From positions 124,001 to 188,000 of IMG/VR virus record IMGVR_UViG_3300042515_001753: 64,000 nucleotides of DNA; one strand, written 5' to 3'. A model generated the notes under the pieces. That model was not told the DNA's origin, did not search any database, and saw only the letters and a list, made by a program, of their open reading frames with translations. The position numbers were made by a program, and so were the translations under genes. Numbering within the stretch: the first letter of the stretch is position 1; each line of letters opens with the position of its first letter. Below are positions 9,620 to 62,500 of the stretch, one piece after another.

Positions 9620-9691
9620 TTGGTGAATTGCTTGAGTACGAATGTAGAATAACAGGTTTTGGGGGATTAATCAACCCCCTTGTGACACTTC

Positions 9692-9904: not shown

Positions 9905-9953
9905 TTGGATTTGTTTGGTATGAATGTAGAATAACAGGATTGAGGCAGGAAGT

Positions 9954-10139
9954 CTAGGGGTCTTGTGACAGTTCCTCAAGTGGCACAGTATCAATTCTCC
10001 TTGGTGTGTTGGGTGTATACTCTGGATGAGAATTCTCCCATTTGACTAGTTCATTAACCCAATCTTCCTGCCCTAATACATTAACCCAATCTTCCTGCCC
10101 TAATACATTCTTCCAGAAATTATCGTAGTTCATAATCAT
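9954..10139 (-). CDS. small protein with an internal 27-bp tandem duplication
   Basis: NVLGQEDWV twice. Confidence 0.45.
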   Translation of the reverse strand: MIMNYDNFWKNVLGQEDWVNVLGQEDWVNELVKWENSHPEYTPNTPRRIDTVPLEELSQDP

Positions 10140-10342
10140 ACCTCTGCCAGCAACAGTTTGTGAATACGGTCTGCTTCTTCTAGAACATCAGGGTCTAAAC
10201 GGTCCCATTCTACCCAATCATATGCAGACCCTGCAGTTTCATATGAACCATCAGATAGCAGCGGAGCATACATTAGGACCCGCTGATTGTTTGCATCCAG
10301 TTTGTAAGTGCAACCGTTGAGTTCGGAAATGACGAAAACCAT
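10136..10342 (-). CDS. small hypothetical protein
   Basis: MVFVISEL start after the cassette. Confidence 0.55.
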   Translation of the reverse strand: MVFVISELNGCTYKLDANNQRVLMYAPLLSDGSYETAGSAYDWVEWDRLDPDVLEEADRIHKLLLAEV

Positions 10343-10419
10343 TTGGTGTCTCAGGTATGAATGTAATATATCAGGGATTGTGGAGAACCGCAACCCCCCT
10401 TGTGCCAGTTCTCAGAGTG

Positions 10420-10611
10420 TCACATCACAACTCTGGAAGTATAAGGATTAGTCCTAACTTCCCAACGTTTCGCTGTAGGATACTGACGAAAGATAATCTC
10501 ATCAATCTTCTTCTCTATCCATTTGTTATACTTTTTATAATTGCCAATCTCTTGATTGAGTAGTAGAACATTATACTCTGAATCTTGGACTTGCAGATAC
10601 CAAGTTTGCAT
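10420..10611 (-). CDS. small hypothetical protein
   Basis: ORF with its own cassette. Confidence 0.55.
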   Translation of the reverse strand: MQTWYLQVQDSEYNVLLLNQEIGNYKKYNKWIEKKIDEIIFRQYPTAKRWEVRTNPYTSRVVM

Positions 10612-10699
10612 CGGTGAATTCCTCAGGTATGAATGTAGAATATCAGGGTTTAGGCAGGAAGTCTAGGGGTCTTGTGCCAGTTCGAGAATTGTCACATCA

Positions 10700-10940
10700 T
10701 TATATCCGGATACTAAAAAATCCTCCTATTCTTGATATCGTTTCAAGAACACGAGATAACTATATTCAGTTCGGTAATCTTCGTTTGTTCGCTATATTCG
10801 GCGCCGTGGGAAACCTATAGTTAAACCCTGTCCGCCTAGATGATATTTAAGGGATACTTAGTTTCTTATATTCTGTCAGATTGACTCTGTATCCCGCAGG
10901 AGAGTTCAAGTGCTGCTCTATGATATAAGAACTCAAGTGA
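10700..10940 (-). ncRNA. candidate structured late ncRNA with a pseudoknot
   Basis: No credible ORF; TATAAATA at 10944-10951; several inverted repeats; loop GGGATAC can pair with GTATCCC. Confidence 0.4.
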
Positions 10941-10981
10941 TTTTATTTATATAAGTTTGTGCCAATTAATGAAGTGGCACA

Positions 10982-11134
10982 TTACACCCACGGTTCGAGT
11001 TCCTTTATGCTAGCATAGACATCTTCGTCACCTTCGAGGTCTAGAAGGTCCTTCCAGTCGGTTGTTTCTATATCTAGGTCATCATAGCACATAATGTCTA
11101 ATGTAACCCGTACAAGGCGCTTCTGGGCAATCAT
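10982..11134 (-). CDS. small acidic protein (50 aa)
   Basis: Own translation MIAQKRLVRVTLDIMCYDDLD... Confidence 0.55.
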   Translation of the reverse strand: MIAQKRLVRVTLDIMCYDDLDIETTDWKDLLDLEGDEDVYASIKELEPWV

Positions 11135-11815: not shown

Positions 11816-12547
11816 ATGGCACAGGGTATAGTATACGTCATCATCAACAAAGAAACGGGGCACAAGTACCTGAATGCAACCACACTGTCGATGAATAAAG
11901 AATGGCAGAATCACATTCAGGCATCAAACAGAATGTCCACTCAACTTATACACAGAGCATTCCGTCAATATGGACTACACAAGTTCATGATTAAACAGAT
12001 TGATGAATGTGATGAGAAAATACTGGAAGATAAGGTAACTTATTGGTTTGAACAATATAAACCAGAATATAATGATCCTCTACCCAAAAAGAAACCAGAA
12101 CCTATTATTATTGAAGAACCTGTTGTTGTAATAAAAGAAAAGAAATCAACCTGGAGACAAATTAAACCAGAAGAAAGATCAACCGGTAAATGTTTAAGTA
12201 TCAGAGTTCAGGGTACACATATTGAAACAGGTGAAGTTAAGGAATGGGAGAATGCCAGAGCTGCTGCATTAGAAATTACGGGAGATAAAAAAAGAAACAG
12301 TAACGTATTAAATGCCGCAAAGAAAGGTAATACCTACTATGGATACAGATGGAAAGTATTAGACACAAAAACTCATAAACGATCAGTCAAAGGAGTACAT
12401 AAAGTGACTCACGTTGAAGTTCATTATGAAAGCATTAGTGAGGCAATACGACAGATAGGTGATGGTAGTAATGGAAGTGGTTTGTTAAAGAGTCTACGCA
12501 ATCCCAACAAATATACCTACAAAGGTTTCTTATGGTTTTATGAATAA
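11816..12547 (+). CDS. degenerate GIY-YIG homing endonuclease-like protein with two NUMOD1-like HTH domains
   Basis: GIVYVIINKETGHKYLNAT (YIG degenerate); YESISEAIRQ...YKGFLW. Confidence 0.65.
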   Translation: MAQGIVYVIINKETGHKYLNATTLSMNKEWQNHIQASNRMSTQLIHRAFRQYGLHKFMIKQIDECDEKILEDKVTYWFEQYKPEYNDPLPKKKPEPIIIEEPVVVIKEKKSTWRQIKPEERSTGKCLSIRVQGTHIETGEVKEWENARAAALEITGDKKRNSNVLNAAKKGNTYYGYRWKVLDTKTHKRSVKGVHKVTHVEVHYESISEAIRQIGDGSNGSGLLKSLRNPNKYTYKGFLWFYE

Positions 12548-20172: not shown

Positions 20173-20994
20173 TTATGCTATTCGTTTTCTTTTAGAAGTA
20201 TCAATACCTTTTGCTTTCTGGTATTTTGATAAACCACCAGAGTTAGAAACATAACCAGTTTCAAGGCACATCCATCTTTGTGCGTTATTTCTTTTTGATA
20301 ATTCACTTTTTTGTTCTGGTGTTAATGAAAAACAACCTGTACCCTCTTCATATCTTTTTCTCCCATTTCTTCTACCAATTTCACTTCTTACTTCTTTTGG
20401 TAATTTTCCAAGTCCATTTGCATATGCTTTTTTAGCAGAGGCAGATAATTCTTCACTTGTTAGTGCAAATATTCCGATACCAAGTTCTTGGACTTTTTGT
20501 GCTCCCTTTTTACCATCTTCGGTCATTTGCTCTTTGGTTCTACCAAACACTCCAGTTTTATTTTGCATTTGTGTTTTTGCTCCCATTTTACCACCTTTTC
20601 TACCTGCTTTGGATAGTTCTTCTTGCGTCATAGAAAATATACCAATATTTTCTTCTTTTATTTTTTTCACAAGTTTTTTACCATTTTCTTTCAAAACTTT
20701 CAAAGATACTTTTCCACCACAACCTTCATTAAGACACCACTTATCGGCATTAAAGAATGGTTTAATCAATCTTGTTTCAACTTCTTGTGCTTCTAACCAA
20801 CCTTCATCTGTGAAGTCAAAGAATTGAACTATTTGTTTCTTTGGTGTATAAAGTTTCCAACACCATCGGTTTGTCTTTGGAGAACCCATATAATACTCAT
20901 TATATGTTTTTTCTTTATGAACTCCATAATAGTAATATGGAACTTCTTCAAAGGTAATCTTATACAAGTATATTCTTGGACTTTGTGAAGTCAT
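20173..20994 (-). CDS. GIY-YIG (Seg-like) homing endonuclease
   Basis: IYLYKIT...YYYYGVH...YMGS, A..VE..LI, CLNE; C-terminal GIF...E..S..GRKGG repeats. Confidence 0.75.
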   Translation of the reverse strand: MTSQSPRIYLYKITFEEVPYYYYGVHKEKTYNEYYMGSPKTNRWCWKLYTPKKQIVQFFDFTDEGWLEAQEVETRLIKPFFNADKWCLNEGCGGKVSLKVLKENGKKLVKKIKEENIGIFSMTQEELSKAGRKGGKMGAKTQMQNKTGVFGRTKEQMTEDGKKGAQKVQELGIGIFALTSEELSASAKKAYANGLGKLPKEVRSEIGRRNGRKRYEEGTGCFSLTPEQKSELSKRNNAQRWMCLETGYVSNSGGLSKYQKAKGIDTSKRKRIA

Positions 20995-21040
20995 TTCTAT
21001 TCTACTGGTACTGCATTAGTATTTATAAGAGTTTATAATA

Positions 21041-21100
21041 GAAAAGGTGCCCCGAAGAGCACCTAATCTGTCCGTAGAGAATTGCAGTACCAACAGACAT
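21041..21100 (-). ncRNA. putative antisense sRNA cognate to the nuclease at 20173..20994
   Basis: ATAAATA 21104-21110, hairpin 21069-21099, terminator 21045-21064 plus T run; loop complementary to the mRNA leader at 21001-21015. Confidence 0.6.
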
Positions 21101-21878
21101 TCTTATTTATTATCGTTCTCTACCTCTTCTTCCAGTTGCTTATAAAGCGCACATTCGTATCCACACAAAAATGCACTTTCAACCCAACTAATAAGTATTT
21201 GTTTCCTTTGGTTCTCATCCTCAATTTTTATGTCGTCCATAAAGTATTCATACCGATATGTAAATCTACCGTAAAAATCTTCATAAAACCATTTGTTAAA
21301 TGAAAGTTGAGCGTCTTTTTGAGGGTCAAAATATTCATTTGCAGGATGTTTAGTCATCGTAGTTTCCTCTTGATTTTGGTGAGACAATCATTAAATCCTT
21401 CTACACTACACTCCACATAAATATTTTGACTTCCTGCTGCTGATTGTTCTTTCGGCAACCATTCTTTCTCAATTCTATCTACCAAACTTTCAATAGTCTC
21501 TGCTGCCTCATTATTATTGAGAAAGATTTCATCCCACCAATCAGCAATAATACCATAAAGAGTTTCTGGTTTCTTTGGTTCTTCCACTCTCTTATACTTC
21601 ACACCCATAATGGTTGCGTAGTCTCCTTCTATGAGAACTTTTGAGATGTCGGTTTCAGTCATTTTCTTTCATACAAGGGTATTCAAACTTTTCACCAATA
21701 CATTCTAACATAGTGCGGGCAAAGGTAATCTCACCATAAGCACAACCATCTTCAAAGGCATCATCATAACTACCAGCACTTGGAGTATAATCATCTCCAA
21801 ATAGACCTTCATAGCAGTGTTTTACCTCTGCTACTTCTTTGAGAACCTTGAGGAGAAGATTGAGTTTTTCTTCGTTAG

Positions 21879-22028
21879 TCATTGTAGAACATCAATAAGT
21901 TTGTTAAACATCCAAGAGATTATGAGTGCCTGTCCCCAAGTAAGAGGAAAGAAAGACACAAGTGCCCAACCCAATAATCCCACAACAATATAAAATCCAA
22001 TTGTTGCTCCAATCTCGTGTTTAGTCAT
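21879..22028 (-). CDS. small membrane protein, copy 1 (49 aa)
   Basis: MTKHEIGATIGFYIVVGLLGWALVSFFPLTWGQALIISWMFNKLIDVLQ. Confidence 0.6.
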   Translation of the reverse strand: MTKHEIGATIGFYIVVGLLGWALVSFFPLTWGQALIISWMFNKLIDVLQ

Positions 22029-25000
22029 TTTATGTTCCCCGTGAGAAATACTTTGAGTGTCTTCCCATCATTATGAAAACTTACCTGAACTTTAGAACAC
22101 TCATCCCATTCATCCCAAAAAAGGTCTCCATCATCATTTGAAATTACTTCAACACGATTTACATTTGGATACTTTTGAATGTTTTCAGTCATTTGAGGTT
22201 CCTCATAATGAATTCTTTGTATTCTCTTTGCCCCAACTTATAAGCATTCATAGAATAGTCGGTGTCTGGATATCCAATAGTATTAGGCAACCATTCTTTG
22301 AGTGCTTCAATCATAAACTCTATACTTCTTGGGTCAATTTTTCCACCACCTTCTTTGAGGACATAAAAGAAAAATGAGTTCTTGTTTGCTTGGTTCATTT
22401 CAATACCTCCAAGCAAATAGAACAGAGACAATCATCAGTGAATTGGTAGAACCAACCATCCTCGTGGTGAATGCGAAACTCTTTTGTGATTTGGTAAGTC
22501 ATCAGGTCTTTGTGTGTATGAGTGTATTATAAGGCATCCTGTGGGTCTGTGGAGGGGTCTTGTGCCAGTTCTTCAAGTGTCCTACAGACCCAAATGTTTT
22601 CTATCAGTATCACTCAAAGAAGCAAGGTCTTTCTTGAGTTGTTGTAGTTTTCGTTCCTTTGCTTTTACTTTCTCTGCCTTTTCTTTCTCCAGTTGTTTCA
22701 TCCGTTTATCATATTCCTTGTCGGTTTCTTCACGATGCTTGTAGAGATAATATTCAGTGTATTTTTCACCACCATAATCCCATTCATATTCACTCTCAAT
22801 CCCCTCCCAACCAGCATCTAATTCTGCTTGAAGTGAGGAAATAATGTCTTCAAGTTTTCCATCAATGTCCCCATAATACTTTTGAGTTTCTTTGACTTGA
22901 ATTTTTTTAGGTTGGTTAGTCATTTCAGTTCTCCATAAGAAAGTGTTTTGATTTCTTCTACATTCAAGGTTTTGACATAACCACGAGGATAATCATTATC
23001 ATAAGCATTAAAGACAAAAACAGGAATGTTTCGTTCCTTACAGATTTGTTTGAACTTGTCTTCATTCAGTTCAAACTTACCAACATACTCAACATTTGGA
23101 TACATATCCCAAGATGCTACAAGTCCTCCTGTATAATACCCCCACTCAAACTCATCAAGTTCTTGAATGATGTTTTCTACATCTTGAATGTTTTCTGGAT
23201 TAGTGTAGATGCGTCCGTATCCTTTGTAATTGAAGGCAGTCATTTCAGTTCCTCCAGTTCATTCGCAAGTTCAAGAATGTTCTTTTCAGTAATACCAATC
23301 CACTTGAGTTCTTCTACAACTTTACGAAGAGTAGCAACAGCAATAGTATGAGGATGAGATTGTTCCATATCACCCCAGTCAAATCTCACTTCTTCAATAG
23401 CATCTGCGACTGCTTGTGCCTCTTTAGTCATTTTCATTTCAGTTGTCCTCTATCAAACGAATGTTGTTTTCAATCTCACCTCTCATATCATAAAAATATG
23501 CTTTAGCAGCATCAAGACACCATTTATCGTAGTCATCTTGTGTAGGATAGTCTACATCTTCCAGTTCTCCCCACATTGAAATAAACTCATCTACGGAAAG
23601 TGTGTATTCCAGAGGAATGTATGCGACTTTGGGAATGATGTGGTTAGTCATTTCAGTCCAATCAGTTTAGCAAATTCAGGAGTAATGATGAGGTTTTGTT
23701 CTCTTACAAGATTACGAACTTCTTTACGAAGATTTATCCACTTGTTGTAGTAATCTTGTGATGCTTTTTGTGCTCTGTTTTTAGCATCAAAGTCGCACTG
23801 GTGTTCGTAGGTTCTACTTTCGTAGTATCTCATTTCAGTTCTTGGAGGACAGAGATAAAGGTTTCAAGGCAATCTTTGGGAATGTGAAAAGGTTCCCCCG
23901 TTTTAGTTTCTTCAATTCCGTGAGATGTGTATTGATTAATCTCTACAAGACCTTGACCATCATCAGTAAGTTGGTAGAACCAATCATCTTCAATGTTGTG
24001 AATACGAAGTTGTCGGGTGATTTGGTAAGTCATTTGATAGTCACCGTTTGATTTTTGATTTGGCAAAGACGGGAAAGATTATCACCCGCAGTAGCAACTT
24101 GAAGGAAGTTGTAGTTAGTTCCACATTGCTCGTTGAGTGCTTTCTGAGTTGTGAGGACCTGCATGACCCCTGTGATGGGGGCAGCAAGAAGAACCAAAAC
24201 AATACCACCAGTAATCACAGCAATCCAAGCATCCGTAAAATCAAAGTTGTTGCGTTTCATTTCAGTTCCTCAAAATTGATGTTTAATTTCTTCTTCTGTT
24301 GCTATCTCCACAATAGGATAACTCATATCTTCATAAGCACCAAAATCAAAATCAGTACTCAATCTTGAGGCAACATTATCGCACAGATAATCAGCAAAAA
24401 TTCCTGGGTCAAGTTCTCCATCATCTGTAAGCATATCATCATCCTTATGCTTTTCGGGGTCAAACCTCACATAAAAAGTTACTTTATAACCTTTTAGATT
24501 TTCCAAAGCATCATTTACCTTCTGCTGTTCCTTATGCTTTTGGATTTGAAGTTCAAGTTCGTTGAGTTGTTCTTTGGTCAGTTGTGAAAGGTCAATCATC
24601 AGGTGTCTGTGTGTATAAGAGTATTATAGGGCATCCAGAGGCACCCAGAGCATCCCCTGTGCCAGTTCTTCAAGTGTCCTTACACCGATGTAATGGAATA
24701 CGAAGAAACTGAAAGAACCTTCCAATATATCCTATCGGTTCTCCGCATTTAGGACAACAATAAGATGGATAAGTCATTTATCTTTCCAAGTAAAGTCAAA
24801 AAAGATTTTAGCACAATTCCTCACCAACCAGTTAGGTTTCTTATCCAGATACATTTTGATGTTTGGTTGAATAGACCAATAACCTACCTTATTTGTACCA
24901 ATTCTATACTCTGTATTCCAAGATACAGTATTATTGGCAACAAGATAAGAACCATCTGTTCCTACTGTAAGTGTTACTGGAAAACTACCATATTTTTTTG

Positions 25001-25569
25001 CGGATTCAAAGTCCTCATCCTGTTTCTTACAGAACTCATCATACCTTTTCAACTTATACAACCAGTTGTGCCCAATCCTATATTCAAGATGAGTTTTCTC
25101 AATCAGTTTCTCAAACTTCTCTTCCAGTTCTTGTGAGATTTCTTCTAATGACTTGCGTGGTAATTGAAATGAACCTTTGATTTCAGGATGCTTATAAGGA
25201 ATGGTGAAGTATTCCTTTGCGACTTCATATTGTTCATTATCTTCACCCATAGAAGCAATCAAACCCATAGTATCAAAGACATTTTTTATATCTTTGATGG
25301 TTTTGAGTTTGCTTGTATCAAGTTTGTGATTTAGTCGTTCAGTCATTTTACAGCATCCACAAATACAGGAACTTGACCACAAATCTCATTTGCCGCAGTA
25401 TCATTCACACCATAAGATTTTCTACATTCTATCACAATCTCATAAGATTTCAAGAACATCTCTCTGTCCTTTTGAGTATTGTAAGTGTTTAGTAGTTCCA
25501 TAGAAAGGAAATAACCAGTAATGATAAGAAGTGGAATAATGAGAGTAAAGATAAAAAGTTTCATTTCAG

Positions 25570-25782
25570 TCATAATCCTTTGCGTGATACTTCTTCATTT
25601 AATTCCCAACCAGCATCGTGCCCCACTTTGAAACCTTTAGTATAACCTTCATCATAAAGTTCTCGGGCAAACTTCAAGAGGTCTTCTTCATCACATTCCC
25701 AGTAAATGTCGTTTGTTGTTTTACTTATGTGTCTATCAAACCCATAGGATTTAGCAAGTTCAATAATTTCAGGATTAGTCAT
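25570..25782 (-). CDS. hypothetical protein, copy 1
   Basis: Near-identical to 27834..28046. Confidence 0.65.
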   Translation of the reverse strand: MTNPEIIELAKSYGFDRHISKTTNDIYWECDEEDLLKFARELYDEGYTKGFKVGHDAGWELNEEVSRKGL

Positions 25783-27833
25783 TCTTCAATCTCCAAGAAC
25801 ACCAGACCTTACACTATCCACACCTTCTCCATAACCATCACTATAACCCTTATTATATGCCTTATAAGTAGATATAAGAGCAAACTTTACAGCAACCTCA
25901 CGGAAGGCATTATTGAGAGCACCAATCATTTCAGTATTCATTCCAAACTGGGTTCCATCTCCCCAGAGTTCAATAAGTTCTTGTTCAGTCATCAGTTTGC
26001 CTCCAACTTGTAGTAATCATACTTCACCTTACACCCCTTTGGTTGTTCCATACAATACACAATTACTTTTTCTTCTGTTTCTTGTCGTGCGGTGACTGTT
26101 CCCAAGAGAAGTCCTGGAAAAAATCCTATCACAATACCACTAAGGATAATACCAAGAGTTGGTGTAAGATTGTCGTCAGTCATCAGTTTGCCTCCAATTC
26201 AGTAGCAATATCTAAAATTGCCTCACGAATACTTTCATTTCTTGTTTCAAGTGCTTCATCCCATTCTCTATGCCCTGAAAAACAGGCATAATTTTCAGGG
26301 GCAACATTATCAGCAAGAACACGAAGAGCAGCAGCAAAACCCTCTCGGATTGTTCCTCCGTTAGAAAATACTTCATCGGCAGCATCTATGATTGCTTGTG
26401 TTTGGGGTGAAAGGTTAGTCATCGGTTGGTTGCTTATGAGTGTATTATAGGGCATCACAGGAGCATTTGGAGTGTCCTTGTGCCAGTTCGTCAAGTGTCC
26501 CTCACAATACCTCACAAAGCCCTTGAATACTATACCTTGTAATAAATCCTTTGGTTGTGTATTTTTTCTTATAATTCTCAATAAACTCTTTTGCTTCTTT
26601 TTTGGTTTCAAATGTACCGAAGTTGCGATAGAATTCTTCAATAGTACCATCATAACTATCAATATAAGTTCTCACAATCCACTTATGAGAATGCTCTGGG
26701 TAAAAATCATTTTCTTCTATGTGTTTATAGTATTCTTCTTTACTCATAATACATATCCTCCTCATACTTCACATAATCACTTTGAAGATAATTGAAGAAC
26801 TCTCCATCATCGTGGGTCATAGTCCAGCACCATTCATCAAAACATTCACCAATCCAATACCAACCAGATTGGAGTTTCTCAAAGACATTCATAGGTCTGT
26901 TGTATTTCATTTCTCCTCTACCCAAGTACAATCAAAACAAAGTTTCATCATAAACCTCACAAACCTATTAGGAACGTGTCCTTCTTGTGGAGTATAAGCA
27001 ATTCCACAACCAGGACTACCACCAAACATATAACAAGTCCAATTAGATTGTTTTGGATTATGAATGTAGGAAGATATATAAGGATACGGTAGATTATCCC
27101 CAGAAGGTTTTACTGGTTGTCCTATGTTATACTCCATCGCATCAACATCCCAACCACAACATTCCACAGCACTATGAAGTGTAGAAAGAAACTCTGGGGT
27201 GATAAGTTCTTTGAGTTCTTGTTTCGTCATTTCAAATTTTCTCCCAAAACAGTAAGACATTCTTCATATCCTTTCAAGTATTCTCCAGTCATCACATTAT
27301 GAGTGTATTGAGACATCCATTCTTTTACAATTTCACAAAACTCATCACAATCAGGTACAATCCATACTGTTTCATGAAATAATTGATGAAGAGTTTTGAG
27401 TTCTTCTGGTTCTTCTTCTGGTTCTTGTGATACTTTCTCTTCATAAGCAGCATTATAACCCTGCTCAAAATTCGTCCAAGTTGAACCATCCCAACAAGTA
27501 TCGGCAATATCAGTCACAGGATACCTACCATAAACTCTTTTGAATGCTTCTTCTACTGGTGATTTTGTTTTTTCCAGTTCCTCCAAGAATGAGAGTTTCT
27601 TCTCAAGCATTTTGATTTCTGCTTTTACTTTTTGAATTTCAGTCATTTTAGTTCCTCAATAATGGATTTGATTTGTTTGAGATTATCATAGTTTTCTTTA
27701 TGAAAATCATAAAGTTCAGACAAACTCTCTATGTTATTTTCGGTATAATTAGTTTCCTCACGGATTTCCCAAGAAAGACTTTCCATCTCTCCTGATGCTT
27801 CTTCAAGATAATAGTTGAGAGTATCAAGTAAAG

Positions 27834-28046
27834 TCATAACCCTCTGCGTGATACTTCTTCATTTAGTTCCCAACCAGCATCGTGCCCTACTTTGAAACCT
27901 TTAGTATAACCCTCATCATAGAGTTCTCGGGCAAACTTCAAGAGGTCTTCTTCATCACATTCCCAGTAAATGTCGTGTGTTGTTTTACTTATGTGTCTAT
28001 CAAACCCATAGGTTTCAGCAAGTTTTAGAAGTTCTTCGTTAGTCAT
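27834..28046 (-). CDS. hypothetical protein, copy 2
   Basis: Near-identical to 25570..25782. Confidence 0.65.
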   Translation of the reverse strand: MTNEELLKLAETYGFDRHISKTTHDIYWECDEEDLLKFARELYDEGYTKGFKVGHDAGWELNEEVSRRGL

Positions 28047-29925
28047 TTTCTAAAAAGTCGTTCAAGTTTTTCTTTGTTCTTGAAGAGTTCATAAGATTTG
28101 ATTTGCTCTCCATAATACTTACTGATGTGCCTACACAAATCTTCTTCTTGTTTAGTAATATCCAGATTATGTTTGTCTTTCATGATAAGGATAGTTTCAA
28201 TATCTTTGAGAGCACTAACTGGAATATCTAAAAACTCTTCGTAGGTCATAATTACCACTCCAATTCAACATACACATAATCCCTCAAATAATCAGGAAGG
28301 TTTTCTTTCAGGTATTCTACCATATATTCTTGAAGTTCATAAGCAGTTGGAGAGCACTCTTCAATCAACACACCATACTCCGCATCCTCATCGTGAATAC
28401 TATACTTCACATATACATCAACCACTCGCAGGTCAGCATAATTTACACCACTAAATCGTTCGGTGGAGTTCTTATGTTCTTCAAGTGCCTTTGTAGCAAC
28501 TTCTTGAATTTGAAATAGATTGTCTTTGATGTTGGAGTTCATTTGTTGTATTTCAGTAGCATTTTGAGTGTTGTTGATGGTTCCATACTCTCATCAATCT
28601 TATGAGGTTCCAGAAGTTCTACAAGTTCCTCATACTTCTTCTTATAGTCAATACCCAAATCAACTTCATCCCCAGAAAGAGCATCCCTGATGATTTCTAT
28701 GGATGTGAATATATTATGCCCTTCCCGTATATTTGGTGGAAATATACCATACACAAAATCATAGGTATGTCCTCGTTTATGAAGATATTTTCTAATTTCA
28801 TCTTCAGTCAAAGAAAAGTTGAAAGTATAACCAAATTTTTCACTACAATAATCAAATTTCATTTTTTCACTCCTGTAAGTTCATTTCGTTTCCAGTCATA
28901 CCATAATTCAAATAGTAAAAGAACTGTATTCTCAATCTATCTGGATTTTTGAAACCATCCAAATGAGGATACATAGTTCCTCTCCAAGTGTATAAACAAT
29001 ATTCAAAAACACTTATGGATGTTTGAATAGTCCATTTATGTTTCATCGGTTTCATTTTGCCCTCATCGCAGTAATCACAGCATTTCTTACGGTTTTTCCT
29101 TTTAGATGGTTCATACGAGACCCACCATTCATAAACACCCAATCACTTTCACCATTCATTTGGAGATTGTGTGGATGAAATTGATTGAGTAGAAATTCAA
29201 GGATTTCTGTGTCTGTTGGTTCAGTCATTTTCTTCATCGGGTAGTTTTTCATTCAAATCAATACCATCTAAAACTTTATCAGACCATTTTAGCACATTCT
29301 CAATCAGTTTATCATTAACTTCTTTTTTCTTTTCCACAAACTTTTCAATCAGTTCATCATTAGGGTCGTTGAGGATTTGTTTTACTGGGTCTTTCTCTTC
29401 AATCATCAGTTTGATTTGTTTGAGATTATCATAAAGTTCTTTATTGAAGTCATAACATTCAGTCAAATGGTCTATGTTGTTGTCCTCATAGTTAGTTTCC
29501 TCACGGATTTCCCAAGACAAACCATCCATATCTGCTGCGGTTTCTGTGAGAAAGTATTCAAGTGTTTCAAGTAAATTCATTTTCTAATCACAGCAATTAC
29601 TTTACGGTTTGGATACTTCTCTACAATTATATCACGAGCATTCTCATAATCAATAGCATCCTTTACGGTTTCATAATACACAGTTTTATCTGCGTCATCC
29701 CAAGTTTGAACTTCGTAAGTCATTTTTCCTCCCAAAAAGGGTTTCATTTCAATCCACTCATACAAATAGAACAAAGACAATCATCAGTTTTAGGAACTCT
29801 AAACATAATGTGATTTCCAGAGCAACAATCTCTATCACCACATTTCATACAATTATCGCAAACCCACTCTTTTTGATTACGACATTTGACGAAATCTTCA
29901 AGAGTGTATTGTTGGAGAATAGAAG

Positions 29926-30075
29926 TCATTCTAATACATCAATAAGTTTGTTAAACATCCAAGAGATTATGAGTGCCTGTCCCCAAGTAAGAGGAAAGAA
30001 AGACACAAGTGCCCAACCCAATAATCCCACAACAATATAAAATCCAATTGTTGCTCCAATCTCGTGTTTAGTCAT
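29926..30075 (-). CDS. small membrane protein, copy 2
   Basis: 149 bp identical to 21889-22037. Confidence 0.6.
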   Translation of the reverse strand: MTKHEIGATIGFYIVVGLLGWALVSFFPLTWGQALIISWMFNKLIDVLE

Positions 30076-31321
30076 TTTATGTTCACCTTGAAGAGTTTGT
30101 AGATGGCATCAGCAACAGCAAGTGCTTCTACATTTCCCATACAAATATGTTGAATTCGTTTATCTCCTTTTTCTTTATCAAACTGCCAATAAGAAATGGT
30201 GCATCCATCGCATCCCACATCAATATGAGTGTCTTCTACCGTATACCAATAATCTCCGTATTCTTGAATACGAACTTGGTTTGTGATTTCAATAGTCATT
30301 TGGAGTTCCTTTGGTTATGAGACTATTATAAGGCATCTGGTGCCCCTGTGGAGGGGTCTTGTGCCAGTTCGTCAAGTGTCCTCTGTTCTTCAAGGATTGT
30401 TTCAAAAATCATTCTGGTATAGGTTTCTGTTGCTCCCGACTGTCTTGCTAATCTTATAATGTCTTTATCTTTATTAGTCATCCACATAAACCTCAAAGAT
30501 AATTTTATTACGCACAATACCCATTATATCCCTTTCCATACTCATACTCGCAACCTGTGCTTTTCCTTGTTGGATTTTATCTACTACTTGTTGAAAAGAT
30601 ACATTCAAGTCATCAGGGTCATAACATTTTGCGAGTTTTCGTGGTTTTGATTTCTCTACTGGTTTTGGAGGTTCTGGTGGTTTTGGATTGTGGATTTCAT
30701 TATATTTTTCAATTAGTGGATTAGTCATTTTCTTTACAATACCTTTGATATTCCCAATGATGAACCATTTCTACAAGGAAGAACACTTTGAGGTGCTCCT
30801 TTGAGTTTCTCTGGGTTGAGTTTATATCCCGTTGTTCCTATTTTTAGTGTTGGTTCAATCATAAGGTATCCATTCGGCAAAACTAAAGATATAAGCAAGT
30901 CCCCATTCTAATGTATGAGGTGGTAGTTCGTCAATATGATTAAACGCAAGTCGTCTTGCTTCCAAGATGCGTTCTCTACCTACCGCAAGTAGATTTGCTT
31001 TAGAACCTTTGAGAAACTCATTATAATCTGCCTGATTATTCTGTTTCGCACCAGAGATATACAATCGTCTCATTTCAGTAAAAAGTTCTGCGGTTTCGGG
31101 GGCAAATGTAATCACTTCTTCCCCCAAAGGGATTTCCATAGTTTTCATCGCACTCATAGAAAACTTCATAGCATCTCTGGTTTCTTCTACTGATAAGGCA
31201 TCTTCATCCTCATCACGAAACTTATACTGAATAATACCATTTGAACATTCAATCACTCTCAACAGAGCAATCTTGCCCTTCTCTGCGTCAGGTAGTGCTT
31301 GAAATCTTGTGTCCCAGTCAA

Positions 31322-31924
31322 TCATTTTTTTCCAAGTCTCCAACCATCACCGGGACATTCTAGCATCATTTTACAATTTCCGCAACCATCATTCCACCAC
31401 TTTTTACCTTTTCGTGCCTCACTCATTTTTCTTCTGGTTTCTTCTGAATGATTTTTACCTTTTTGCGATTCACTTAATTTTCTTTTGGTTTCTTCGGAAA
31501 AAGTTTTACCTTTTTGCGATTCACTCATATTTCTTCTGGATTCTTCTGAATGAGTTTTACCTTTATGTGATTCACTTATTTTTCTTCTTATTTCTTTTGA
31601 ACGAGGTTTGCCTTTAAGTGCTTCACTCATTTTTCTTCTGGTTTCATCACTTACAACAGCACCAGAAACTCCATCTCCACCATTAGTTTTATTATGAAGA
31701 ATACCAGTTCCCAAATCTTTTCTACCGAACACCGCAATCATATAAACCTCGTGCCTAAACGATTCTTCTTCGGTTAAGTTTTGTTTTAGAATAAGTATTT
31801 TTGATTTATCTTTTGGTGGTTTGATGCCTTTATCTCTTCTTCTATATGCCCTATTACCTTTACCTTTTCCTATGTAATAAGGTGTCTTATCTTCACGCAA
31901 ATATGCGTAAGTGTAGTAATACAT
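31322..31924 (-). CDS. GIY-YIG homing endonuclease with NUMOD3 repeats
   Basis: YYTYAYLRED.TPYYIGKG..R, E..MI..FGR, L.N.T.GGDG; about 5 copies of SEETRRKMSE.KGK. Confidence 0.85.
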   Translation of the reverse strand: MYYYTYAYLREDKTPYYIGKGKGNRAYRRRDKGIKPPKDKSKILILKQNLTEEESFRHEVYMIAVFGRKDLGTGILHNKTNGGDGVSGAVVSDETRRKMSEALKGKPRSKEIRRKISESHKGKTHSEESRRNMSESQKGKTFSEETKRKLSESQKGKNHSEETRRKMSEARKGKKWWNDGCGNCKMMLECPGDGWRLGKK

Positions 31925-31967
31925 CTGCTTTATAGTGTGTCGTAATACTATTTATACAAGTTATACA

Positions 31968-32024
31968 AGAAAAGGTGCCCGAAAGCACCCAATCTTTGCT
32001 TCTGGTTACGACACACATAAGCAT
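31968..32024 (-). ncRNA. putative antisense sRNA cognate to the nuclease at 31322..31924
   Basis: ATAAATA 32028-32034, hairpin 31997-32023, terminator 31974-31989 plus TTTTCTT; complementary to the leader at 31926-31945. Confidence 0.6.
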
Positions 32025-32184
32025 CATTATTTATTTATTTTGTTCCCAGACCATTTGGTGCGAGAGTTTGTCTCTCAAGGAATTAATTCTTTCGTCATCA
32101 TACTGCTGAAAGTTTCCTTTCTTCTCTATTTTTTTGTAATAGTGTAGAGCATTTATAATTATACCATAATCTTCTATTGTAATA

Positions 32185-34373
32185 TCAATTTTCATAACTC
32201 AATTGAATAATCTTTGATATATCTATTGTTGCGAAGAATGTCTGTAATCCTACAATATCCCAAGTTTTAATTTTAACACAGAACGGAACCATTGCCAATC
32301 CACCAATCAAACGAAAATAACACCCCAACTTTACATCCACATAAAGAAGAATGAAGTATCCAACCAATAACAGAATACTACCAATAATACGAAGAGATGT
32401 TGCTGTTAATTTAATCACATTCTCATTTTTAATACTTCTGCCGTTACTTCTTGTTGTTTCATATACAACTTTAGCATACCTTTGAGTGAAATCTGTAGTT
32501 CTTCTACATTCTCACAATTATCAATATTTCTTGCTAATTTTTCATACTCAAACATCTTTGAGGGATTTGTGAGTATAATATCATCTGGATGTCCCATCAT
32601 TTTTCTTATAAAACTCTATTTTAAGTTGAGTAATGAGTAAATCAACTTTATCTTCAATACGAGTAAGTCGTTCCTCAATAGTATCTATAAGATACTCATC
32701 AATTGCTTCTTTTTTAACTGAATAAGGGTCAATCGTTGCCATAGTTCCTTGTAGTGAATTGAGTAGTTGTTCGTCAGTCATTTTGCGTCTCCGTTACTGG
32801 TGGAAGTGGTGTTACTGGAGGTAGTATAACAGGTTCTGGTGCTGGTAGTTGTAGTGGTTGTGCCACTTCTACAACTGGTTTTTGTGATGTCACTTCTTCC
32901 AGTTGTTTCTCAAGTTGCATAATCCTCTCATCAAGTGCTGATGGTGGAGTATTCGCAGAACTTTCGGCAAGTTTATAACCAGCAACACTCACACCAAAGA
33001 TACTTGCGAGTGCTGCAACAGCGGAAATAGTTTTAGTGAAACTCATAATCAGTCGGCATTTTCGGTGTAGTATTCATCACGATAAGTATTCAAATTTCTA
33101 CAGTACCAAGAAAGAACATCAACAGAAACACTATACTTCCAGATATGAAGGTCAAATCCAAACAAGGAAGAATGTCCGACATTTACAAGCAAACCAGAAC
33201 TTCCTGCATATTCATTAAGGTCAACATTCAACTGAAGCAAGCAAAGTCGTTTGATTTGTAGAATATTCAGGTAATACTCTTTGCCGAAATCATCAACAAA
33301 CAGATAATCAATTAGTTTCATTTTCCTCAAAATTAAAGTACATATCAAAATACCGGTAATACTTCTGCTTTTTTACATCCCTGTGATTCTACCATATTCT
33401 TCCAGAAAAAGGCACTCTCAACATCAAGGAAGACCGCAGACTGTTTACTGAACTGACCCTTTTTCTTGGGTTTGAGGTAGACAACGCTGTATTTCATAAT
33501 TAGGAAAATGGTGAGTACGAAGAGCATTATACACAATAAATGAGTTTGTAATAAAAATGGAGAGGAACGCAATCAGACGAACCACCGCAATTTGGTCCGA
33601 TTCTTTGTCGGTCTTACCGGTCTTCTCCCCCAGAGACTTTGCAATCAGTCTCCATAGATTACTTTGCTTCTGTTTCATAGTCTCCAATAATTTCTATATC
33701 TTTCCATTCATTTGGATAAACAAGCATACAAACACTTCTGAACTTATCATCATAGGTTTCTATACAAACTGTGACATATTCATCACATACGAATTCAATA
33801 ACCCCAGTGCATTTCTTATACTCAACTTGAATTCCTTCGGTGAAAGTCATCATACGAAACACATCTCCAGAGAAGTTTTCTTAGGTGGCATAGCAGTATA
33901 TGAAGTAGTATTCTCTATATTTACCTCTTTGCCAGCAGTCTTAGAATTCACAGGAGCATAATAGACTTTTTTCTTTGGCGAATAGAAACCCCACACAGTT
34001 TTGGTAGGAGCACCAAGATTATAGTCAAACTTACGAGTACAGCACAACCAAATACGAATCATTCTTGTATTGAATTGTTCGTACTCATAAGAATACTCTT
34101 TTGTGGGTGCCTTATGAGGAAACTCGGGAATCATTAGGTTAAGAATGCTTCAATTACTGAACTTTGATAGTCATCTTTTAAGGCAAATTTTTGTGCTTTG
34201 ATGACATTTTCACGAAGTTTATTATAATGTTCTGAATATTGATTGCCGTCCTCAGAAACAATTAAATCAAAACACTCATTATCACTTTTTGCAATTACAT
34301 TCCAGATTCCAGAATATTCTGAGATGGGGAATGGCAAAAAATGCTCCACAAGATACAAATACTTTTGGTCCAT
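32185..34373 (-). other. small conserved-type cyanophage ORFs (32185-32418 membrane, 32415-32600, 32581-32781, 32774-33046 Pro-rich with signal anchor, 33049-33321, 33445-33687, 33659-33862, 33850-34134, 34134-34373)
   Basis: Coupled ORF chain. Confidence 0.55.
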
Positions 34374-34443
34374 TTACCTTATTTGTTTAACAGATATATC
34401 ATAAGTTATTTTAGAGAAAAAGTCAAGAAGAATGTGACACCTA

Positions 34444-35136
34444 TTAAACTGTCCACAACTTATTTGCAACAATCTTTTCAAATGTTACAAGTTTAATACC
34501 AAACATTTCCGCTATTTGTATATTTTTATATTGTTTTAATGTATGCAATTTTCTAATTTGATTAACTTTATCCCAATTAAGAATTGCTCTTCCATTTCTT
34601 TCCCCAGGAAGACCTTTTCTGCTTGTATCTTCTCTAATTTCCCTTTCTTTTTGATATTTCTCAACTTCTTCTTCAGTTCTTGGAATAATTTTATAACCTT
34701 TATGTTGTAATCTTTTTCCATAAAGAGTTTCGTGAATATGACCCGCATTTAGATTATTATCTCTACAATATTTGGATAGATTTTTTATCAGTTCTCTTTT
34801 TCCATTTGGTTCTTCTACAAGATATTCTTTTATACAATATTCTCTTCCTTGATTTCCACCGGTAGTTGTATTATATCCATTATTAAAAGTATCGTATGTA
34901 TGAATCCAGTATATTTCCATTTCATTTAATAAAGAAATATCATATTCTTCTATTATACCCCAAATAAATCCATCCTTACCATATTTTTTAAGGGCATTTG
35001 CAAACTTGTGATTATAATTGACACAATCTAAAAAATGCTCTCCAATTCTTGAATTTATATATTTTTTAATTGTTTGTCCAATATATTTTTTTCTTGTCGC
35101 AATACAATAGGCACAATAAATCTTACCTTTAGACAT
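34444..35136 (-). CDS. GIY-YIG homing endonuclease
   Basis: GKIYCAY...KYIGQT..R..EH, E.YWI..Y.T..NGYN.T.GG; start reassigned to MSKGKIY after TATAAATA. Confidence 0.85.
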   Translation of the reverse strand: MSKGKIYCAYCIATRKKYIGQTIKKYINSRIGEHFLDCVNYNHKFANALKKYGKDGFIWGIIEEYDISLLNEMEIYWIHTYDTFNNGYNTTTGGNQGREYCIKEYLVEEPNGKRELIKNLSKYCRDNNLNAGHIHETLYGKRLQHKGYKIIPRTEEEVEKYQKEREIREDTSRKGLPGERNGRAILNWDKVNQIRKLHTLKQYKNIQIAEMFGIKLVTFEKIVANKLWTV

Positions 35137-35171
35137 ATCTGCTCTTTTGTTGGGTGCAATAGTATTTATAC

Positions 35172-35230
35172 AAGAAAAGGAGCATCTCTGCTCCTCCTCT
35201 ACCTGTGAAGATTGCACCCAACTCAGGCAT
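35172..35230 (-). ncRNA. putative antisense sRNA cognate to the nuclease at 34444..35136
   Basis: CTAAATA 35234-35240, hairpin 35200-35229, terminator 35178-35195 plus TTTCTT; perfect 12-nt complement to the leader at 35149-35160. Confidence 0.6.
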
Positions 35231-35395
35231 CACTATTTAGTTTAGCAGAATGTTGTAGACAAGTCAACTGGCGGCGAAGTTCTGTATGAATCGGTACTAA
35301 GTATGAGTTAAAATAATGCTCGTATTCATTATCTTTCATAAGTTTTCTAATACCCCCCACTTGTTGTAGTGCCAGAAGAATCTTGATTTCATTAG

Positions 35396-36810
35396 TCATA
35401 GAAACTCCGCAACAAAGTAATCAACCGTCAATTCCAGTTTTGCGGCAGTGCTTTCAATATATTCATCTAAAATCTCAGGAGAATCTTGCTGAATAATGGC
35501 ATAGTAATTATACCAGAGAGGGGAAAGAACTTCATTCATTTGGAGTAACGGCAATTGGGGTGAGATTCTGGAAGTGAGGCACATACAGTATCATATGCCT
35601 TGAACAGTTTTGCATCACGATGAGCAAGTGCTGCATTATACATCAGAATGCCGATGAATGCCAGAAAGATGTAAGTAACTTTCATCAGCAGGCACCCATC
35701 ATAGGATTGACATTAGCAGGTTGAGTATTGAATCCGGTCACTTTATAACCAAGACCGATACGCTCATCACACTCACGCTCAAAGTCACTTTTGGTGATAC
35801 ATTTAGTGCTCATCGTATCCACACCTTGAAACTTGAGAACCTTGTAGATAAACTGAGTATCACCGGCAACGGGGAAATAGTCAACAACCATTGTGCCGGT
35901 GGTAGAAGTGAGTTGCATGGGGTGTTCCGTTGATTACCTTGTAATTATAGGGCATTACCAGCACCACAGTAGTGCCGCTGTGCCAGTTTGGAAATTGGTT
36001 TTGAGTGTCTGGGATACCATAGGCAGCGGTCGGTGCTTGGAGAGGCACCCAGAACCCTTGCAAACACTAGGGTCAAAACCTGATTTTTTGCGATTTTCAC
36101 CCTTTAGGTGCTATGCTTGGTCTGGTGCGGGCAGAATCTGCTGTTTTTTGAAGTTCCTCATCCTTGTTTGAGACAGATACGATCCATTATACACATAGCA
36201 AGGTCAAATTGCAAGTCCTCATCAACTTCTCCAAGTTTTTCTTTCAGAGCATCAGGGACAACTTGCTGCATAAATTCACACCAACGCTCATCCTCATAGA
36301 TGTAATCAATCACTTCAGGAACCAGTGCCGATGCCAGATTGCTGATTGTTTGACTAGAGAGTGCCATAATTAGTTAGTAGGAAACTTGAGATTGTATTTG
36401 GAAATGAGAAGGTCTCTTACAAGTTCGCGGTCAATACTATCACCACAGAACTCTTCATTCTTGATTTGAAGAATCTGAATCAAATCATCAGTTGCTTTTT
36501 GAATCAGAGGAAGAGTTGCATCCATAGGATAGATTCCACCTTCACCATAGAAGGAGAAAACATAATCCACAAACTCATCAAGTTGTTGGTCGGTTTGAAT
36601 TGTCATTTCAGTTACCCTCACCAATAGAGTTAAGAATGTGACGGGCAAACTTCATAAAATCATATGAAGTCACGCCGTAAGGGTCAAAACCATCAAGCAT
36701 ATCAGTCTGATTGTAGGTATTCACAATCAGCAGGCAGGCATCATAGAGTGCCGCTTGGTGCTCCTCCTTGGAGTGAAAAGAGATGGCGCTGTATGCGGGC
36801 AGAGTCACGG
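35396..36810 (-). other. small hypothetical ORFs (35396-35539, 35685-35918, 36158-36367, 36370-36606, 36608-36807)
   Basis: ORFs downstream of promoter cassettes. Confidence 0.5.
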
Positions 36811-62457: not shown

Positions 62458-62500
62458 ACTGGTAAACTTATTGTATAGTTATTTATATAAGTTTACCAGT
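62458..62500 (-). promoter_or_regulatory. late promoter inside a 13-bp hairpin that occludes the HNH translation start
   Basis: ACTGGTAAACTTA-TATAAATAACTATACAA-TAAGTTTACCAGT-ATG. Confidence 0.8.

What the first reader, a model, noticed from the sequence alone, without database searches (positions are those of the whole stretch)
20995..35240. Cognate antisense-sRNA cassette in front of three different GIY-YIG endonucleases
Seen on the minus strand, the same five-part layout precedes three sequence-divergent nuclease genes: TAAATA-N3-ATG, a hairpin with a large loop, a GC hairpin plus U tract (terminator), TATAAATA, then a short leader and ATG. Locus 1 (20995-21110): sRNA TCTGTTGGTACTGCA pairs with leader TGCAGTACCAGTAGA (15 bp including two G-U). 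Locus 2 (31925-32034): TGCTTATGTGTGTCGTAA pairs with TTACGACACACTATAAAGCA. Locus 3 (35137-35240): GTTGGGTGCAAT pairs with ATTGCACCCAAC (perfect 12 bp). The pairing sequences differ between loci, yet complementarity, geometry and spacing are kept, and the target starts where a T4-type late transcript would start. Known: T4 I-TevI-type nucleases use a simple cis hairpin with the late promoter inside it. The separate upstream promoter, own stem and terminator here instead predict a discrete ~60-nt RNA. Inference: an orthogonal sRNA/nuclease pair, with type I antitoxin-like logic, that dampens each toxic nuclease or silences a related incoming one. A nuclease-bound RNA role is less likely. I know of no description of this arrangement.
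Basis: partly seen in the sequence, partly recalled or inferred. Interest (0 to 1): 0.9.

Follow-up and report, generated by a model that had tools for sequence, protein, structure and literature searches.

The report
Mobile control cassette of cyanophage homing nucleases
Three selfish nuclease genes in this cyanophage each carry the same roughly 110-base mobile control cassette, which blocks their translation on read-through transcripts and may also release a small antisense RNA, an idea that is still unproven.

Summary
On the minus strand, three divergent homing-endonuclease genes are each preceded by the same layout:
- a TAAATA box
- a 5' arm inside a local hairpin
- an intrinsic terminator
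- TATAAATA
- a complementary leader, then ATG

The window is a T4-like cyanomyovirus (IMG/VR UViG_3300042515_001753).

The layout is a widespread mobile cassette. I found 209 copies (140 unique) in the fetched viral contigs, almost always in front of GIY-YIG-like or HNH nuclease genes. The long-range helix shows strong compensatory covariation. Empty-site comparisons show the element begins 0-5 nt before the TAAATA box.

The core is the known T4 arrangement, with a late promoter inside a leader-sequestering hairpin. Dassa et al. 2009 already noted such hairpins in cyanophage-like loci.

What seems undescribed:
- the near-invariant upstream late-promoter-like box
- the local hairpin
- the nested terminator

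Together these predict a 49-62-nt RNA complementary to the whole 17-25-nt late leader. A trans-acting sRNA is therefore plausible (about 0.45) but not shown. Arms within one genome are no more different from each other than arms from different genomes, so "orthogonal pairs" is not supported.

The parts
21104..21110 (-). Locus 1 upstream box ATAAATA (late-promoter-like), overlapping the stop codon of ORF 21103-21387
   Evidence: the box is conserved in relatives
21066..21098 (-). Locus 1 local hairpin P2; it contains the 5' arm TCTGTTGGTACTGCA (21083-21097)
21041..21064 (-). Locus 1 intrinsic terminator (8-bp GC stem, UUCG loop) plus T run
21020..21027 (-). Locus 1 late promoter TATAAATA
21001..21015 (-). 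Locus 1 leader 3' arm TGCAGTACCAGTAGA; it ends 6 nt before the ATG
20173..20994 (-). Nuclease 1, 273 aa, homing-endonuclease-like (phrog_314, E 3e-9). It has a GIY..YYG-like N-terminal motif, but GIY-YIG membership is not established
32028..32038 (-). Locus 2 upstream box ATAAATAAATA, overlapping the stop codon of ORF 32031-32195; it is the first bases of the inserted element
31997..32023 (-). Locus 2 local hairpin P2; it contains the 5' arm (32006-32023)
31967..31996 (-). Locus 2 intrinsic terminator (core stem 31973-31990) plus T run
31949..31956 (-). Locus 2 late promoter TATAAATA, preceded by a defective 9-nt duplicate (CTTGTATAA)
31926..31945 (-). Locus 2 leader 3' arm; it ends 1 nt before the ATG
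31322..31924 (-). Nuclease 2, 200 aa, with a GIY-YIG-like N-terminus and NUMOD3 repeats. Its TGA stop overlaps the ATG of the next gene (ATGA)
35234..35240 (-). Locus 3 upstream box CTAAATA, inside the last codons of ORF 35223-35399; the element's left junction lies immediately before it
35201..35228 (-). Locus 3 local hairpin P2.
35173..35200 (-). Locus 3 intrinsic terminator (12-bp stem) plus T run
35163..35170 (-). Locus 3 late promoter TATAAATA
35140..35160 (-). Locus 3 leader 3' arm (core 35149-35160, plus the basal GAGCA pairs); it ends 3 nt before the ATG
34444..35136 (-). Nuclease 3, 230 aa, GIY-YIG (Pfam PF01541, above threshold)
34398..34426 (-). Sigma-70-like promoter (TTGACT-17-TATGAT) in the ~70 nt that the element adds after nuclease 3, in front of the resident downstream gene
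62458..62500 (-). Simple form of the same control. A 14-bp hairpin encloses TATAAATA (62480-62487) and ends at the ATG of the HNH nuclease gene 61744-62457. It has no box and no terminator

Best explanation
Each locus is the 5' control module of a free-standing homing-endonuclease element that has inserted precisely between two phage genes.

**Shown from sequence.**
- The element starts at the TAAATA box and ends at, or shortly after, the nuclease stop codon.
- Its 5' arm and the nuclease leader form a 13-21-bp helix. The helix encloses an intrinsic terminator and a consensus late promoter, and it covers the leader to within 1-7 nt of the ATG.

**Inferred by analogy with T4 I-TevI, segB and Aeh1 mobE.**
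- Transcripts coming from the upstream (early) genes mostly stop at the terminator.
- Transcripts that read through fold the long helix, so the nuclease is not translated.
- Late transcripts start at TATAAATA, which is the first nucleotide of the 3' arm. They lack the 5' arm and can be translated.

The nuclease would therefore be made only late, and the element does little harm to its neighbours. It supplies an end for the upstream ORF. It also either overlaps the next gene's start codon or brings a promoter for that gene.
For: **Folding in the window.** The long helix is in the MFE fold of all three loci (z -4 to -6). It is also in the MFE of the class-1 cassettes among the 58 unique relatives folded; six odd ones were set aside.

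**Covariation.**
- There are 4-6 pair types at every helix position.
- On 96 model-aligned copies, 89.8% of cells pair, against 71.1% in shuffles and 40-54% with slid partners.
- 26 of 29 pairs show compensatory changes.
- Cognate duplexes average -22.6 kcal/mol and non-cognate duplexes -10.4.

**Geometry.** The 3' arm starts 4 nt after TATAAATA and ends 1-7 nt before the ATG.

**Link to nucleases.** 47 of 59 downstream ORFs match phrog_314 'homing endonuclease', and nearly all the rest are other nuclease families.

**Mobility.** Empty-site alleles exist for all three loci.

**Simple form in the same genome.** An HNH gene carries a plain hairpin around TATAAATA.

**Literature.** PMC2988022, PMC3014915 and PMC2677866.
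Against: - No transcript data were available, so promoter use, termination efficiency and translational block are all inferred.
- No clear Shine-Dalgarno sequence is seen in the leader. The block would have to act by occluding the whole short leader.
- A cis-only lock does not need the near-invariant upstream box or the local hairpin P2. The simple hairpins in the same phage group do without them, so this explanation is probably incomplete.
Confidence: 0.8

Rival explanations
1. Trans-acting sRNA, in addition to the cis lock. The box is a gp55-type late promoter. With the terminator it makes a 49-62-nt RNA: a 4-6-nt tail, hairpin P2 displaying the anti-leader, then the terminator hairpin. This RNA pairs with the whole 17-25-nt 5' UTR of the late nuclease mRNA and damps or thresholds its translation. 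Terminated 3' ends of upstream transcripts could act in the same way.
For: **The box.**
- It is present in 62 of 64 cassettes selected only by the terminator-promoter junction, and in 50 of them it lies exactly 4 nt from the 5' arm.
- TAAATA is invariant while its neighbours vary. The base before it is A (41) or C (21) and never G or T.
- ATAAATA is the cyanophage late-promoter core and CTAAATA is the Aeh1 late-promoter core. Both forms precede ordinary genes in the window.
- The box is the first sequence of the mobile element at all three loci.

**Start sites.** The predicted +1 is a purine at both boxes, and each arm starts there.

**P2.** It lies next to the terminator in 49 of 52 cassettes. 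Its two halves pair better with each other than with halves from other cassettes (-6.4 against -3.4 kcal/mol).

**Terminator.** Its stem covaries (10 of 12 pairs).
Against: - No RNA evidence was available.
- P2 covariation is modest on the model alignment: 79% paired against 73% in shuffles.
- The sRNA and its target would be made at the same time from one element, so the benefit is unclear.
- The upstream box is usually a weaker variant than the downstream TATAAATA.
- Arms within one genome are not kept apart (10/94 against 284/2652).
- Simple hairpins (the HNH locus; the L072-L080 type) show that the cis solution works alone.
Confidence: 0.45
2. The box and P2 have no regulatory RNA role. 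The box is kept as the element's end piece (an ORF-closing, AT-rich junction, or a relic of how the cassette arose or recombines). P2 merely stabilises or shapes the 3' end of terminated upstream mRNAs.
For: - The box sits at the element's left junction and overlaps the upstream stop codon in loci 1 and 2.
- Box plus following bases (TAAATA-xTAxTGC) is a direct repeat of promoter plus following bases.
- L094 has a mutated box (TAATATA) yet keeps the cassette.
Against: - A stop-codon role needs only TAA. It would not require six invariant bases plus A/C before them.
- In locus 3 the upstream ORF reads through the box and stops later.
- The deletion variant L037/L038 is not the product of recombination between the two repeats.
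- The fixed 4-nt spacing to the arm is not explained.
Confidence: 0.3
3. The arms are a DNA operator or an RNA ligand bound by the nuclease itself. This would be autorepression like I-TevI at its late promoter, or a nuclease-bound guide RNA.
For: Only by analogy: I-TevI binds an operator that overlaps its late promoter (PMC2988022).
Against: - The same arms occur with nucleases of different families (L005 class A, L282 class B).
- Close relatives of one nuclease carry different arms (L081, L083, L084).
- The arm sequences of locus 2 do not resemble its insertion site (by eye).
- What is conserved is base pairing, not sequence.
Confidence: 0.05

Closest known systems
T4-type translational control of homing endonucleases: late promoter inside an RBS-sequestering hairpin (I-TevI, I-TevII, I-TevIII, segB, Aeh1 mobE; Gott 1988, Gibb & Edgell 2007/2009, reviewed in PMC2988022)
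   Same: - The gene is a nuclease gene.
- A helix covers the translation start region on upstream-initiated transcripts.
- TATAAATA lies inside the helix, so late transcripts lack the 5' arm.
- The window's HNH locus is exactly this simple form.
   Different: - The helix here is long-range (about 70 nt enclosed).
- It also encloses a conserved intrinsic terminator.
- The 5' arm sits in its own hairpin.
- The module begins with a second, near-invariant late-promoter-like box.
- The whole module is a shared mobile cassette used by several nuclease families.
Hairpins upstream of free-standing GIY-YIG/Vsr-like endonuclease genes in 'fractured gene' loci of cyanophage-like metagenomic DNA (Dassa et al. 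2009, PMC2677866)
   Same: - Same phage group and same gene class.
- TATAAATA lies inside the hairpin.
- Two conserved motifs complement each other in the stem.
- The nuclease 3' end overlaps the next gene's start (seen here at locus 2).
   Different: - That paper reads the structure as a cis hairpin only. Its text has no occurrence of 'terminator', and the passages I read mention no upstream box, local hairpin or discrete RNA.
- The loci here lie between small ORFs, not inside split-intein genes.
Type I toxin-antitoxin pairs with a neighbouring, partly complementary sRNA (tisB/istR-1, zorO/orzO; recalled from my own knowledge, not tested)
   Same: If the sRNA exists, the logic matches. A short RNA with its own promoter and terminator lies next to a potentially harmful gene and pairs about 17-20 bp with that gene's 5' UTR.
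   Different: - The protein is a 200-270-aa DNA endonuclease, not a small membrane peptide.
- The sRNA lies on the same strand in tandem, not divergent or antisense.
- Both RNAs would be late-phage transcripts.
- No addiction or stability difference is known.
PeSL mobile regulatory cassettes (promoter-early plus stem-loop) of T4-type phages (Arbiol et al. 2010; recalled from my own knowledge)
   Same: Short, repeated promoter-plus-stem-loop modules that flank small genes in the plastic regions and shuffle between loci. The window also has early-type repeats of this kind at 9349-10984.
   Different: The cassette here carries late promoters, a long-range helix to the leader and a strict link to nuclease genes.
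CfrI antisense RNA of cyanophage S-PM2 (Millard et al. 2010; cited in PMC2984593)
   Same: A cyanomyovirus non-coding RNA linked to a homing-endonuclease gene.
   Different: CfrI is a ~225-nt true antisense transcript running opposite to the nuclease gene and psbA. It is not a same-strand upstream module complementary to the leader.

Membership tests
T4-type late-promoter-in-hairpin control of homing endonuclease genes | The regulated gene encodes a homing endonuclease | tested here: met
   - PHROG homing-endonuclease families match all three genes.
- Pfam GIY-YIG matches nuclease 3 and NUMOD3 matches nuclease 2.
- All three loci have empty-site alleles, which shows the genes are insertions.
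T4-type late-promoter-in-hairpin control of homing endonuclease genes | An RNA helix sequesters the translation initiation region on transcripts that start upstream | tested here: met
   - The helix is in the MFE fold, z -4 to -6.
- It ends 1-7 nt before the ATG in 52 cassettes.
- It covaries.
- Note that no clear Shine-Dalgarno sequence is visible. The whole leader is covered.
T4-type late-promoter-in-hairpin control of homing endonuclease genes | A late promoter lies inside the helix, so late transcripts lack the 5' arm | tested here: met
   TATAAATA lies 4 nt before the first paired base of the 3' arm. This is by sequence only.
T4-type late-promoter-in-hairpin control of homing endonuclease genes | Translation is restricted to late infection (experimental) | not testable with these tools
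   No expression data were available.
Cyanophage-like endonuclease 5'-UTR hairpins of Dassa et al. 2009 | A hairpin with TATAAATA and two mutually complementary conserved motifs upstream of a free-standing GIY-YIG or Vsr-like gene, with the nuclease 3' end overlapping the next gene | tested here: met
   (ATGA overlap at locus 2). Their motif sequences (a supplementary figure) could not be read, so identity of the motifs is not shown.
Type I toxin-antitoxin system | A discrete antitoxin sRNA with its own promoter and terminator | tested here: inconclusive
   A conserved late-promoter-like box and a covarying terminator are predicted. There is no transcript evidence.
Type I toxin-antitoxin system | The sRNA base-pairs with the toxin mRNA | tested here: met
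   Complementarity is 13-21 bp, at -22.6 kcal/mol for cognate pairs. This shows potential only.
Type I toxin-antitoxin system | The toxin is a small, usually membrane-active peptide, and a stable mRNA is paired with a labile sRNA | tested here: not met
   The products are 200-273-aa nucleases. RNA stability is not testable here.
Any Rfam family (release 15) | A covariance-model match | tested here: not met
   No hit at gathering threshold in the window apart from one tRNA. No hit at E<=1 in four cassette-bearing loci.
GIY-YIG nuclease superfamily (all three genes, as the title claims) | A recognisable GIY-YIG catalytic domain | tested here: inconclusive
   - Nuclease 3: Pfam PF01541, 25.7 bits against a 22.6 cut-off, and a weak match to I-TevI 1LN0/1MK0.
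- Nuclease 2: its family links to nuclease 3's at hhalign 65.6%, E 6e-5, over the HEIY...N..GG region. The family profile also has a weak PDB match to a GIY-YIG domain protein (9u75, E 0.02).
- Nuclease 1: no profile link, no PDB hit, and an AlphaFold model with pLDDT 55.8, too poor to search with.

The most novel reading that the evidence does not exclude
The cassette's 5' half is a true late-expressed, roughly 55-nt sRNA gene carried by the selfish element itself. Each homing-endonuclease element would then bring its own antisense regulator, which titrates the late nuclease mRNA by pairing with its entire 5' UTR. That would be a type I antitoxin-like safeguard, and the first trans-acting regulatory sRNA class in T4-like phages. 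It would be modular and shared by GIY-YIG and HNH elements across cyanomyoviruses.
Probability: 0.4. Interest if true: 0.8.

Novelty: new variant of a known kind. Interest (0 to 1): 0.6.

Why it matters
Homing endonucleases are selfish DNA cutters that must be kept quiet to persist. The T4 answer, a late promoter inside an inhibitory hairpin, is a textbook case.

This work shows that cyanomyoviruses use a more elaborate, portable version. It moves as a unit with nuclease genes of different families and inserts cleanly at gene junctions.

A 2010 review of T4 post-transcriptional control states that no small trans-acting regulatory RNA had been functionally characterised from T4 (PMC3014915). 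A 2025 review of phage sRNAs lists none of this kind.

If the conserved upstream box really fires, these elements would provide:
- many natural sRNA/leader pairs with differing sequences
- a test case for how mobile elements limit their own toxicity
- a cultured system in which to test it (S-SRM01 carries several cassettes)

Tried and rejected
- **Megablast of locus 1 against phage records:** no match. The window's origin came from IMG/VR instead.
- **RNAalifold on the MAFFT alignment A1:** no structure, because the hypervariable arms were out of register. I replaced it with per-sequence duplex analysis and a covariance-model alignment.
- **Rfam:** no family.
- **Micro-ORF starting at the 'ATG' after the box:** rejected. 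The triplet is not always a start codon and the ORF lengths are scattered.
- **Box as a stop-codon donor:** insufficient. Locus 3 reads through it.
- **Arms as mimics of the homing site or operator:** no resemblance at locus 2 (by eye), and the arms are not tied to a nuclease family.
- **Enforced orthogonality within a genome:** not seen.
- **Looking for a cultured phage with transcriptome data that carries the cassette:** the cassette-DNA searches found only S-SRM01 among deposited phages. A protein search with nuclease 2 found related genes in other Synechococcus phages, but I inspected only S-SRM01 for the cassette.
- **Gibb & Edgell 2007 and 2009:** not held in the library.
- **Structure prediction of nuclease 1:** too low in confidence to use, so I ran no fold search.
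- **The 5th TATAAATA (10951):** it folds into a similar enclosing helix but has no downstream ORF. Left unexplained.

Full report
**What is there**

Genes in the window run mostly on the minus strand, and the DNA is a T4-like cyanomyovirus. Distant blastn hits go to Synechococcus phages such as S-SRM01. The window is identical to part of IMG/VR contig UViG_3300042515_001753, which is 233,886 bp long.

At the three stated loci the minus strand reads as follows:
- the end of an upstream ORF
- an ATAAATA or CTAAATA box
- 3-4 nt
- a 5' arm
- a GC hairpin plus T run
- TATAAATA
- 3-4 nt
- a 3' arm complementary to the 5' arm
- 1-6 nt
- the ATG of a 200-273-aa ORF

The long-range helix is in the minimum-free-energy fold of all three regions, with z-scores of -5.3, -4.1 and -6.0. 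TATAAATA occurs only five times in 64 kb.

The three ORFs match PHROG homing-endonuclease families. Their GIY-YIG status differs:
- Nuclease 3 passes Pfam GIY-YIG.
- Nuclease 2 has NUMOD3 repeats, and its family profile links to nuclease 3's.
- Nuclease 1 is not proven to be GIY-YIG.

**It is a widespread cassette, and the arms covary**

Homologues of the three nucleases in IMG/VR (99 loci) mostly carry the same module of about 110 nt. Of 58 unique copies, the 52 of the main type all fold with the long helix enclosing the terminator and promoter; six odd ones were set aside.

Measures of the helix:
- It has 13-21 bp (mean 16.9), with 4-6 different standard pair types at every position.
- Cognate 5'-module/leader duplexes average -22.6 ± 1.8 kcal/mol. 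Non-cognate duplexes average -10.4 ± 4.1.
- A covariance model finds exactly the three loci in the window and 96 copies in 78 sources.
- On that alignment 89.8% of cells pair, against 71.1% in shuffles and 40-54% with slid partners.
- 26 of 29 pairs show changes on both sides, including all 12 of the central helix and 10 of 12 in the terminator.

That alignment is fitted to the model, so it leans towards the structure. The per-sequence analysis agrees with it.

**An unbiased look at the upstream box**

I selected sites only by the 18-nt terminator-promoter junction. This gave 74 unique sites:
- 67 have an ORF starting 10-50 nt downstream.
- 64 of those have a strong long helix.
- 62 of the 64 have TAAATA ending 2-7 nt before the first paired base, and 50 have it at exactly 4 nt.

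The six box bases are flanked by variable bases. The base before the box is A (41) or C (21), never G or T. ATAAATA is the cyanophage late-promoter core (NATAAATA; PMC2984593). CTAAATA is the Aeh1 late consensus (PMC1524935). Both forms also precede ordinary genes in the window.

With T4 geometry (box at -13 to -6), the predicted +1 is a purine at both the box and the TATAAATA. It falls on the first or second paired base of each arm. The predicted products are:
- a 49-62-nt RNA ending at the terminator
- a late mRNA whose 17-25-nt 5' UTR is complementary to that RNA over its whole length

**The 5' half folds on its own**

The stretch from the box to the T run folds as two adjacent hairpins in 49 of 52 cassettes. 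These are P2, which carries the variable anti-leader in its apical part, and the terminator. The gap between them is 0-2 nt and the 5' tail is 4-6 nt.

P2 shows several pair types. Its two halves prefer each other over halves from other cassettes (-6.4 against -3.4 kcal/mol). On the model alignment the signal is only modest: 79% paired against 73% in shuffles, and 30 against 11.6 double-change cells.

**It is mobile, and the box is its first sequence**

Relatives provide an empty allele for each locus.

- **Locus 2.** The two resident genes overlap by ATGA in the empty allele. In the window the insert runs from the box to the nuclease stop codon, and that stop recreates the ATGA overlap.
- **Locus 1.** The insert lies between ...GGTAGAGAA and GGACACTT..., with the box 5 nt inside.
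- **Locus 3.** Homology ends immediately before CTAAATA. The element adds a sigma-70-like promoter after the nuclease gene for the resident downstream gene.

At the locus 1 site another phage (L282) carries a nuclease of a different class behind a cassette with different arms. The L282 arms also occur with yet another nuclease class in L005. The cassette is therefore a module that is exchanged between nuclease genes.

Downstream ORFs are almost always nucleases. 47 of 59 match phrog_314, and the rest are mostly other endonuclease families. At least four GIY-YIG-like subfamilies and HNH are represented.

**How it most likely works**

The core is the known T4 solution (PMC2988022, PMC3014915):
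- Upstream-initiated transcripts are terminated.
- Any that read through are silenced by the helix that covers the leader.
- Late transcripts from the embedded TATAAATA lack the 5' arm and are translated.

The window's fourth nuclease gene (HNH, 61744-62457) has the plain form of this control, a 14-bp hairpin around TATAAATA that ends at the ATG. Dassa et al. 2009 reported TATAAATA-containing hairpins with two complementary motifs upstream of such genes in cyanophage-like metagenomic loci. They read them the same way. I put 0.8 on this cis lock.

**What the cis lock does not explain**

Three features go beyond what a cis hairpin needs:
- the near-invariant box at a fixed distance from the arm
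- its position as the element's first sequence
- the P2 hairpin

Terminated 3' ends of upstream transcripts would carry the same anti-leader and could act in the same way.

Against the stronger form of the idea:
- Arms within one contig are no more distinct than arms from different contigs (10 of 94 against 284 of 2652 cross-reactive pairs).
- Some contigs hold two cassettes with the same arms (L093/L094 and L015).

"Orthogonal pairs" is therefore not supported as a selected property. No transcript evidence was available. Among deposited phages the cassette was confirmed only in S-SRM01.

**Novelty**

Rfam has no such family. A 2025 review of phage sRNAs lists nothing like it. The T4 review says no trans-acting sRNA had been characterised in T4.

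The finding is a new, richer variant of a known control. It would become a new kind of phage sRNA system only if the box is shown to fire.

Noticed in passing
window 62505-62770 (-), intron 62561-62750: A tRNA-like gene is interrupted by a group I intron (Rfam Intron_gpI, 64.4 bits, E 4e-16). ARAGORN did not call this tRNA. The HNH nuclease gene 61744-62457 follows directly, outside the intron. This is a free-standing nuclease beside an intron, as with psbA/F-CphI in S-PM2.
   Followed up: partly
window 10880-11010 (-), TATAAATA at 10944-10951: This is the fifth TATAAATA. It is enclosed by a long-range helix around a small hairpin and followed by an AGAGCAG leader-like motif. No ORF follows for about 340 nt. 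It may be a cassette whose nuclease gene was lost, or a late non-coding transcript.
   Followed up: partly
window 11816-12547 (+): Another GIY-YIG-like ORF (243 aa) lies on the opposite strand with no cassette. It is preceded by two 28-nt tandem repeats that contain TATAAT-like boxes. It is a nuclease gene that does not follow the late-only layout.
   Followed up: no
window 9349-10984: Four to six copies of a repeated intergenic module of up to 95 nt lie in front of small ORFs. Each has a TGTGxCA...TGxCACA hairpin plus conserved downstream sequence. They resemble the early-promoter/stem-loop cassettes of T4-type plastic regions.
   Followed up: partly
L016:2759, L056, L162, L178, L271: These carry a second cassette class in front of class-A nucleases. 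The arms are of the TGTGTCTGGGG / CCCCAGACACA type and reach the ATG. No TAAATA box is found next to the 5' arm.
   Followed up: no
L037, L038 (compare L024-L026): These are deletion variants in which the box, 5' arm, terminator and promoter are gone but the leader 3' arm and the nuclease gene remain, fused behind the upstream gene.
   Followed up: no
L195, L225, L241: These cassettes are inserted directly after a tRNA-like 3' end (GGTTCGA...), here in front of HNH nuclease genes. tRNA clusters appear to be a recurrent landing site.
   Followed up: no
window 21028-21040 and 31957-31965 (-): Loci 1 and 2 (and L008) have a short defective duplicate of the promoter region (TATAAAC / TATAAC) just before the true TATAAATA. 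Most relatives lack it.
   Followed up: no
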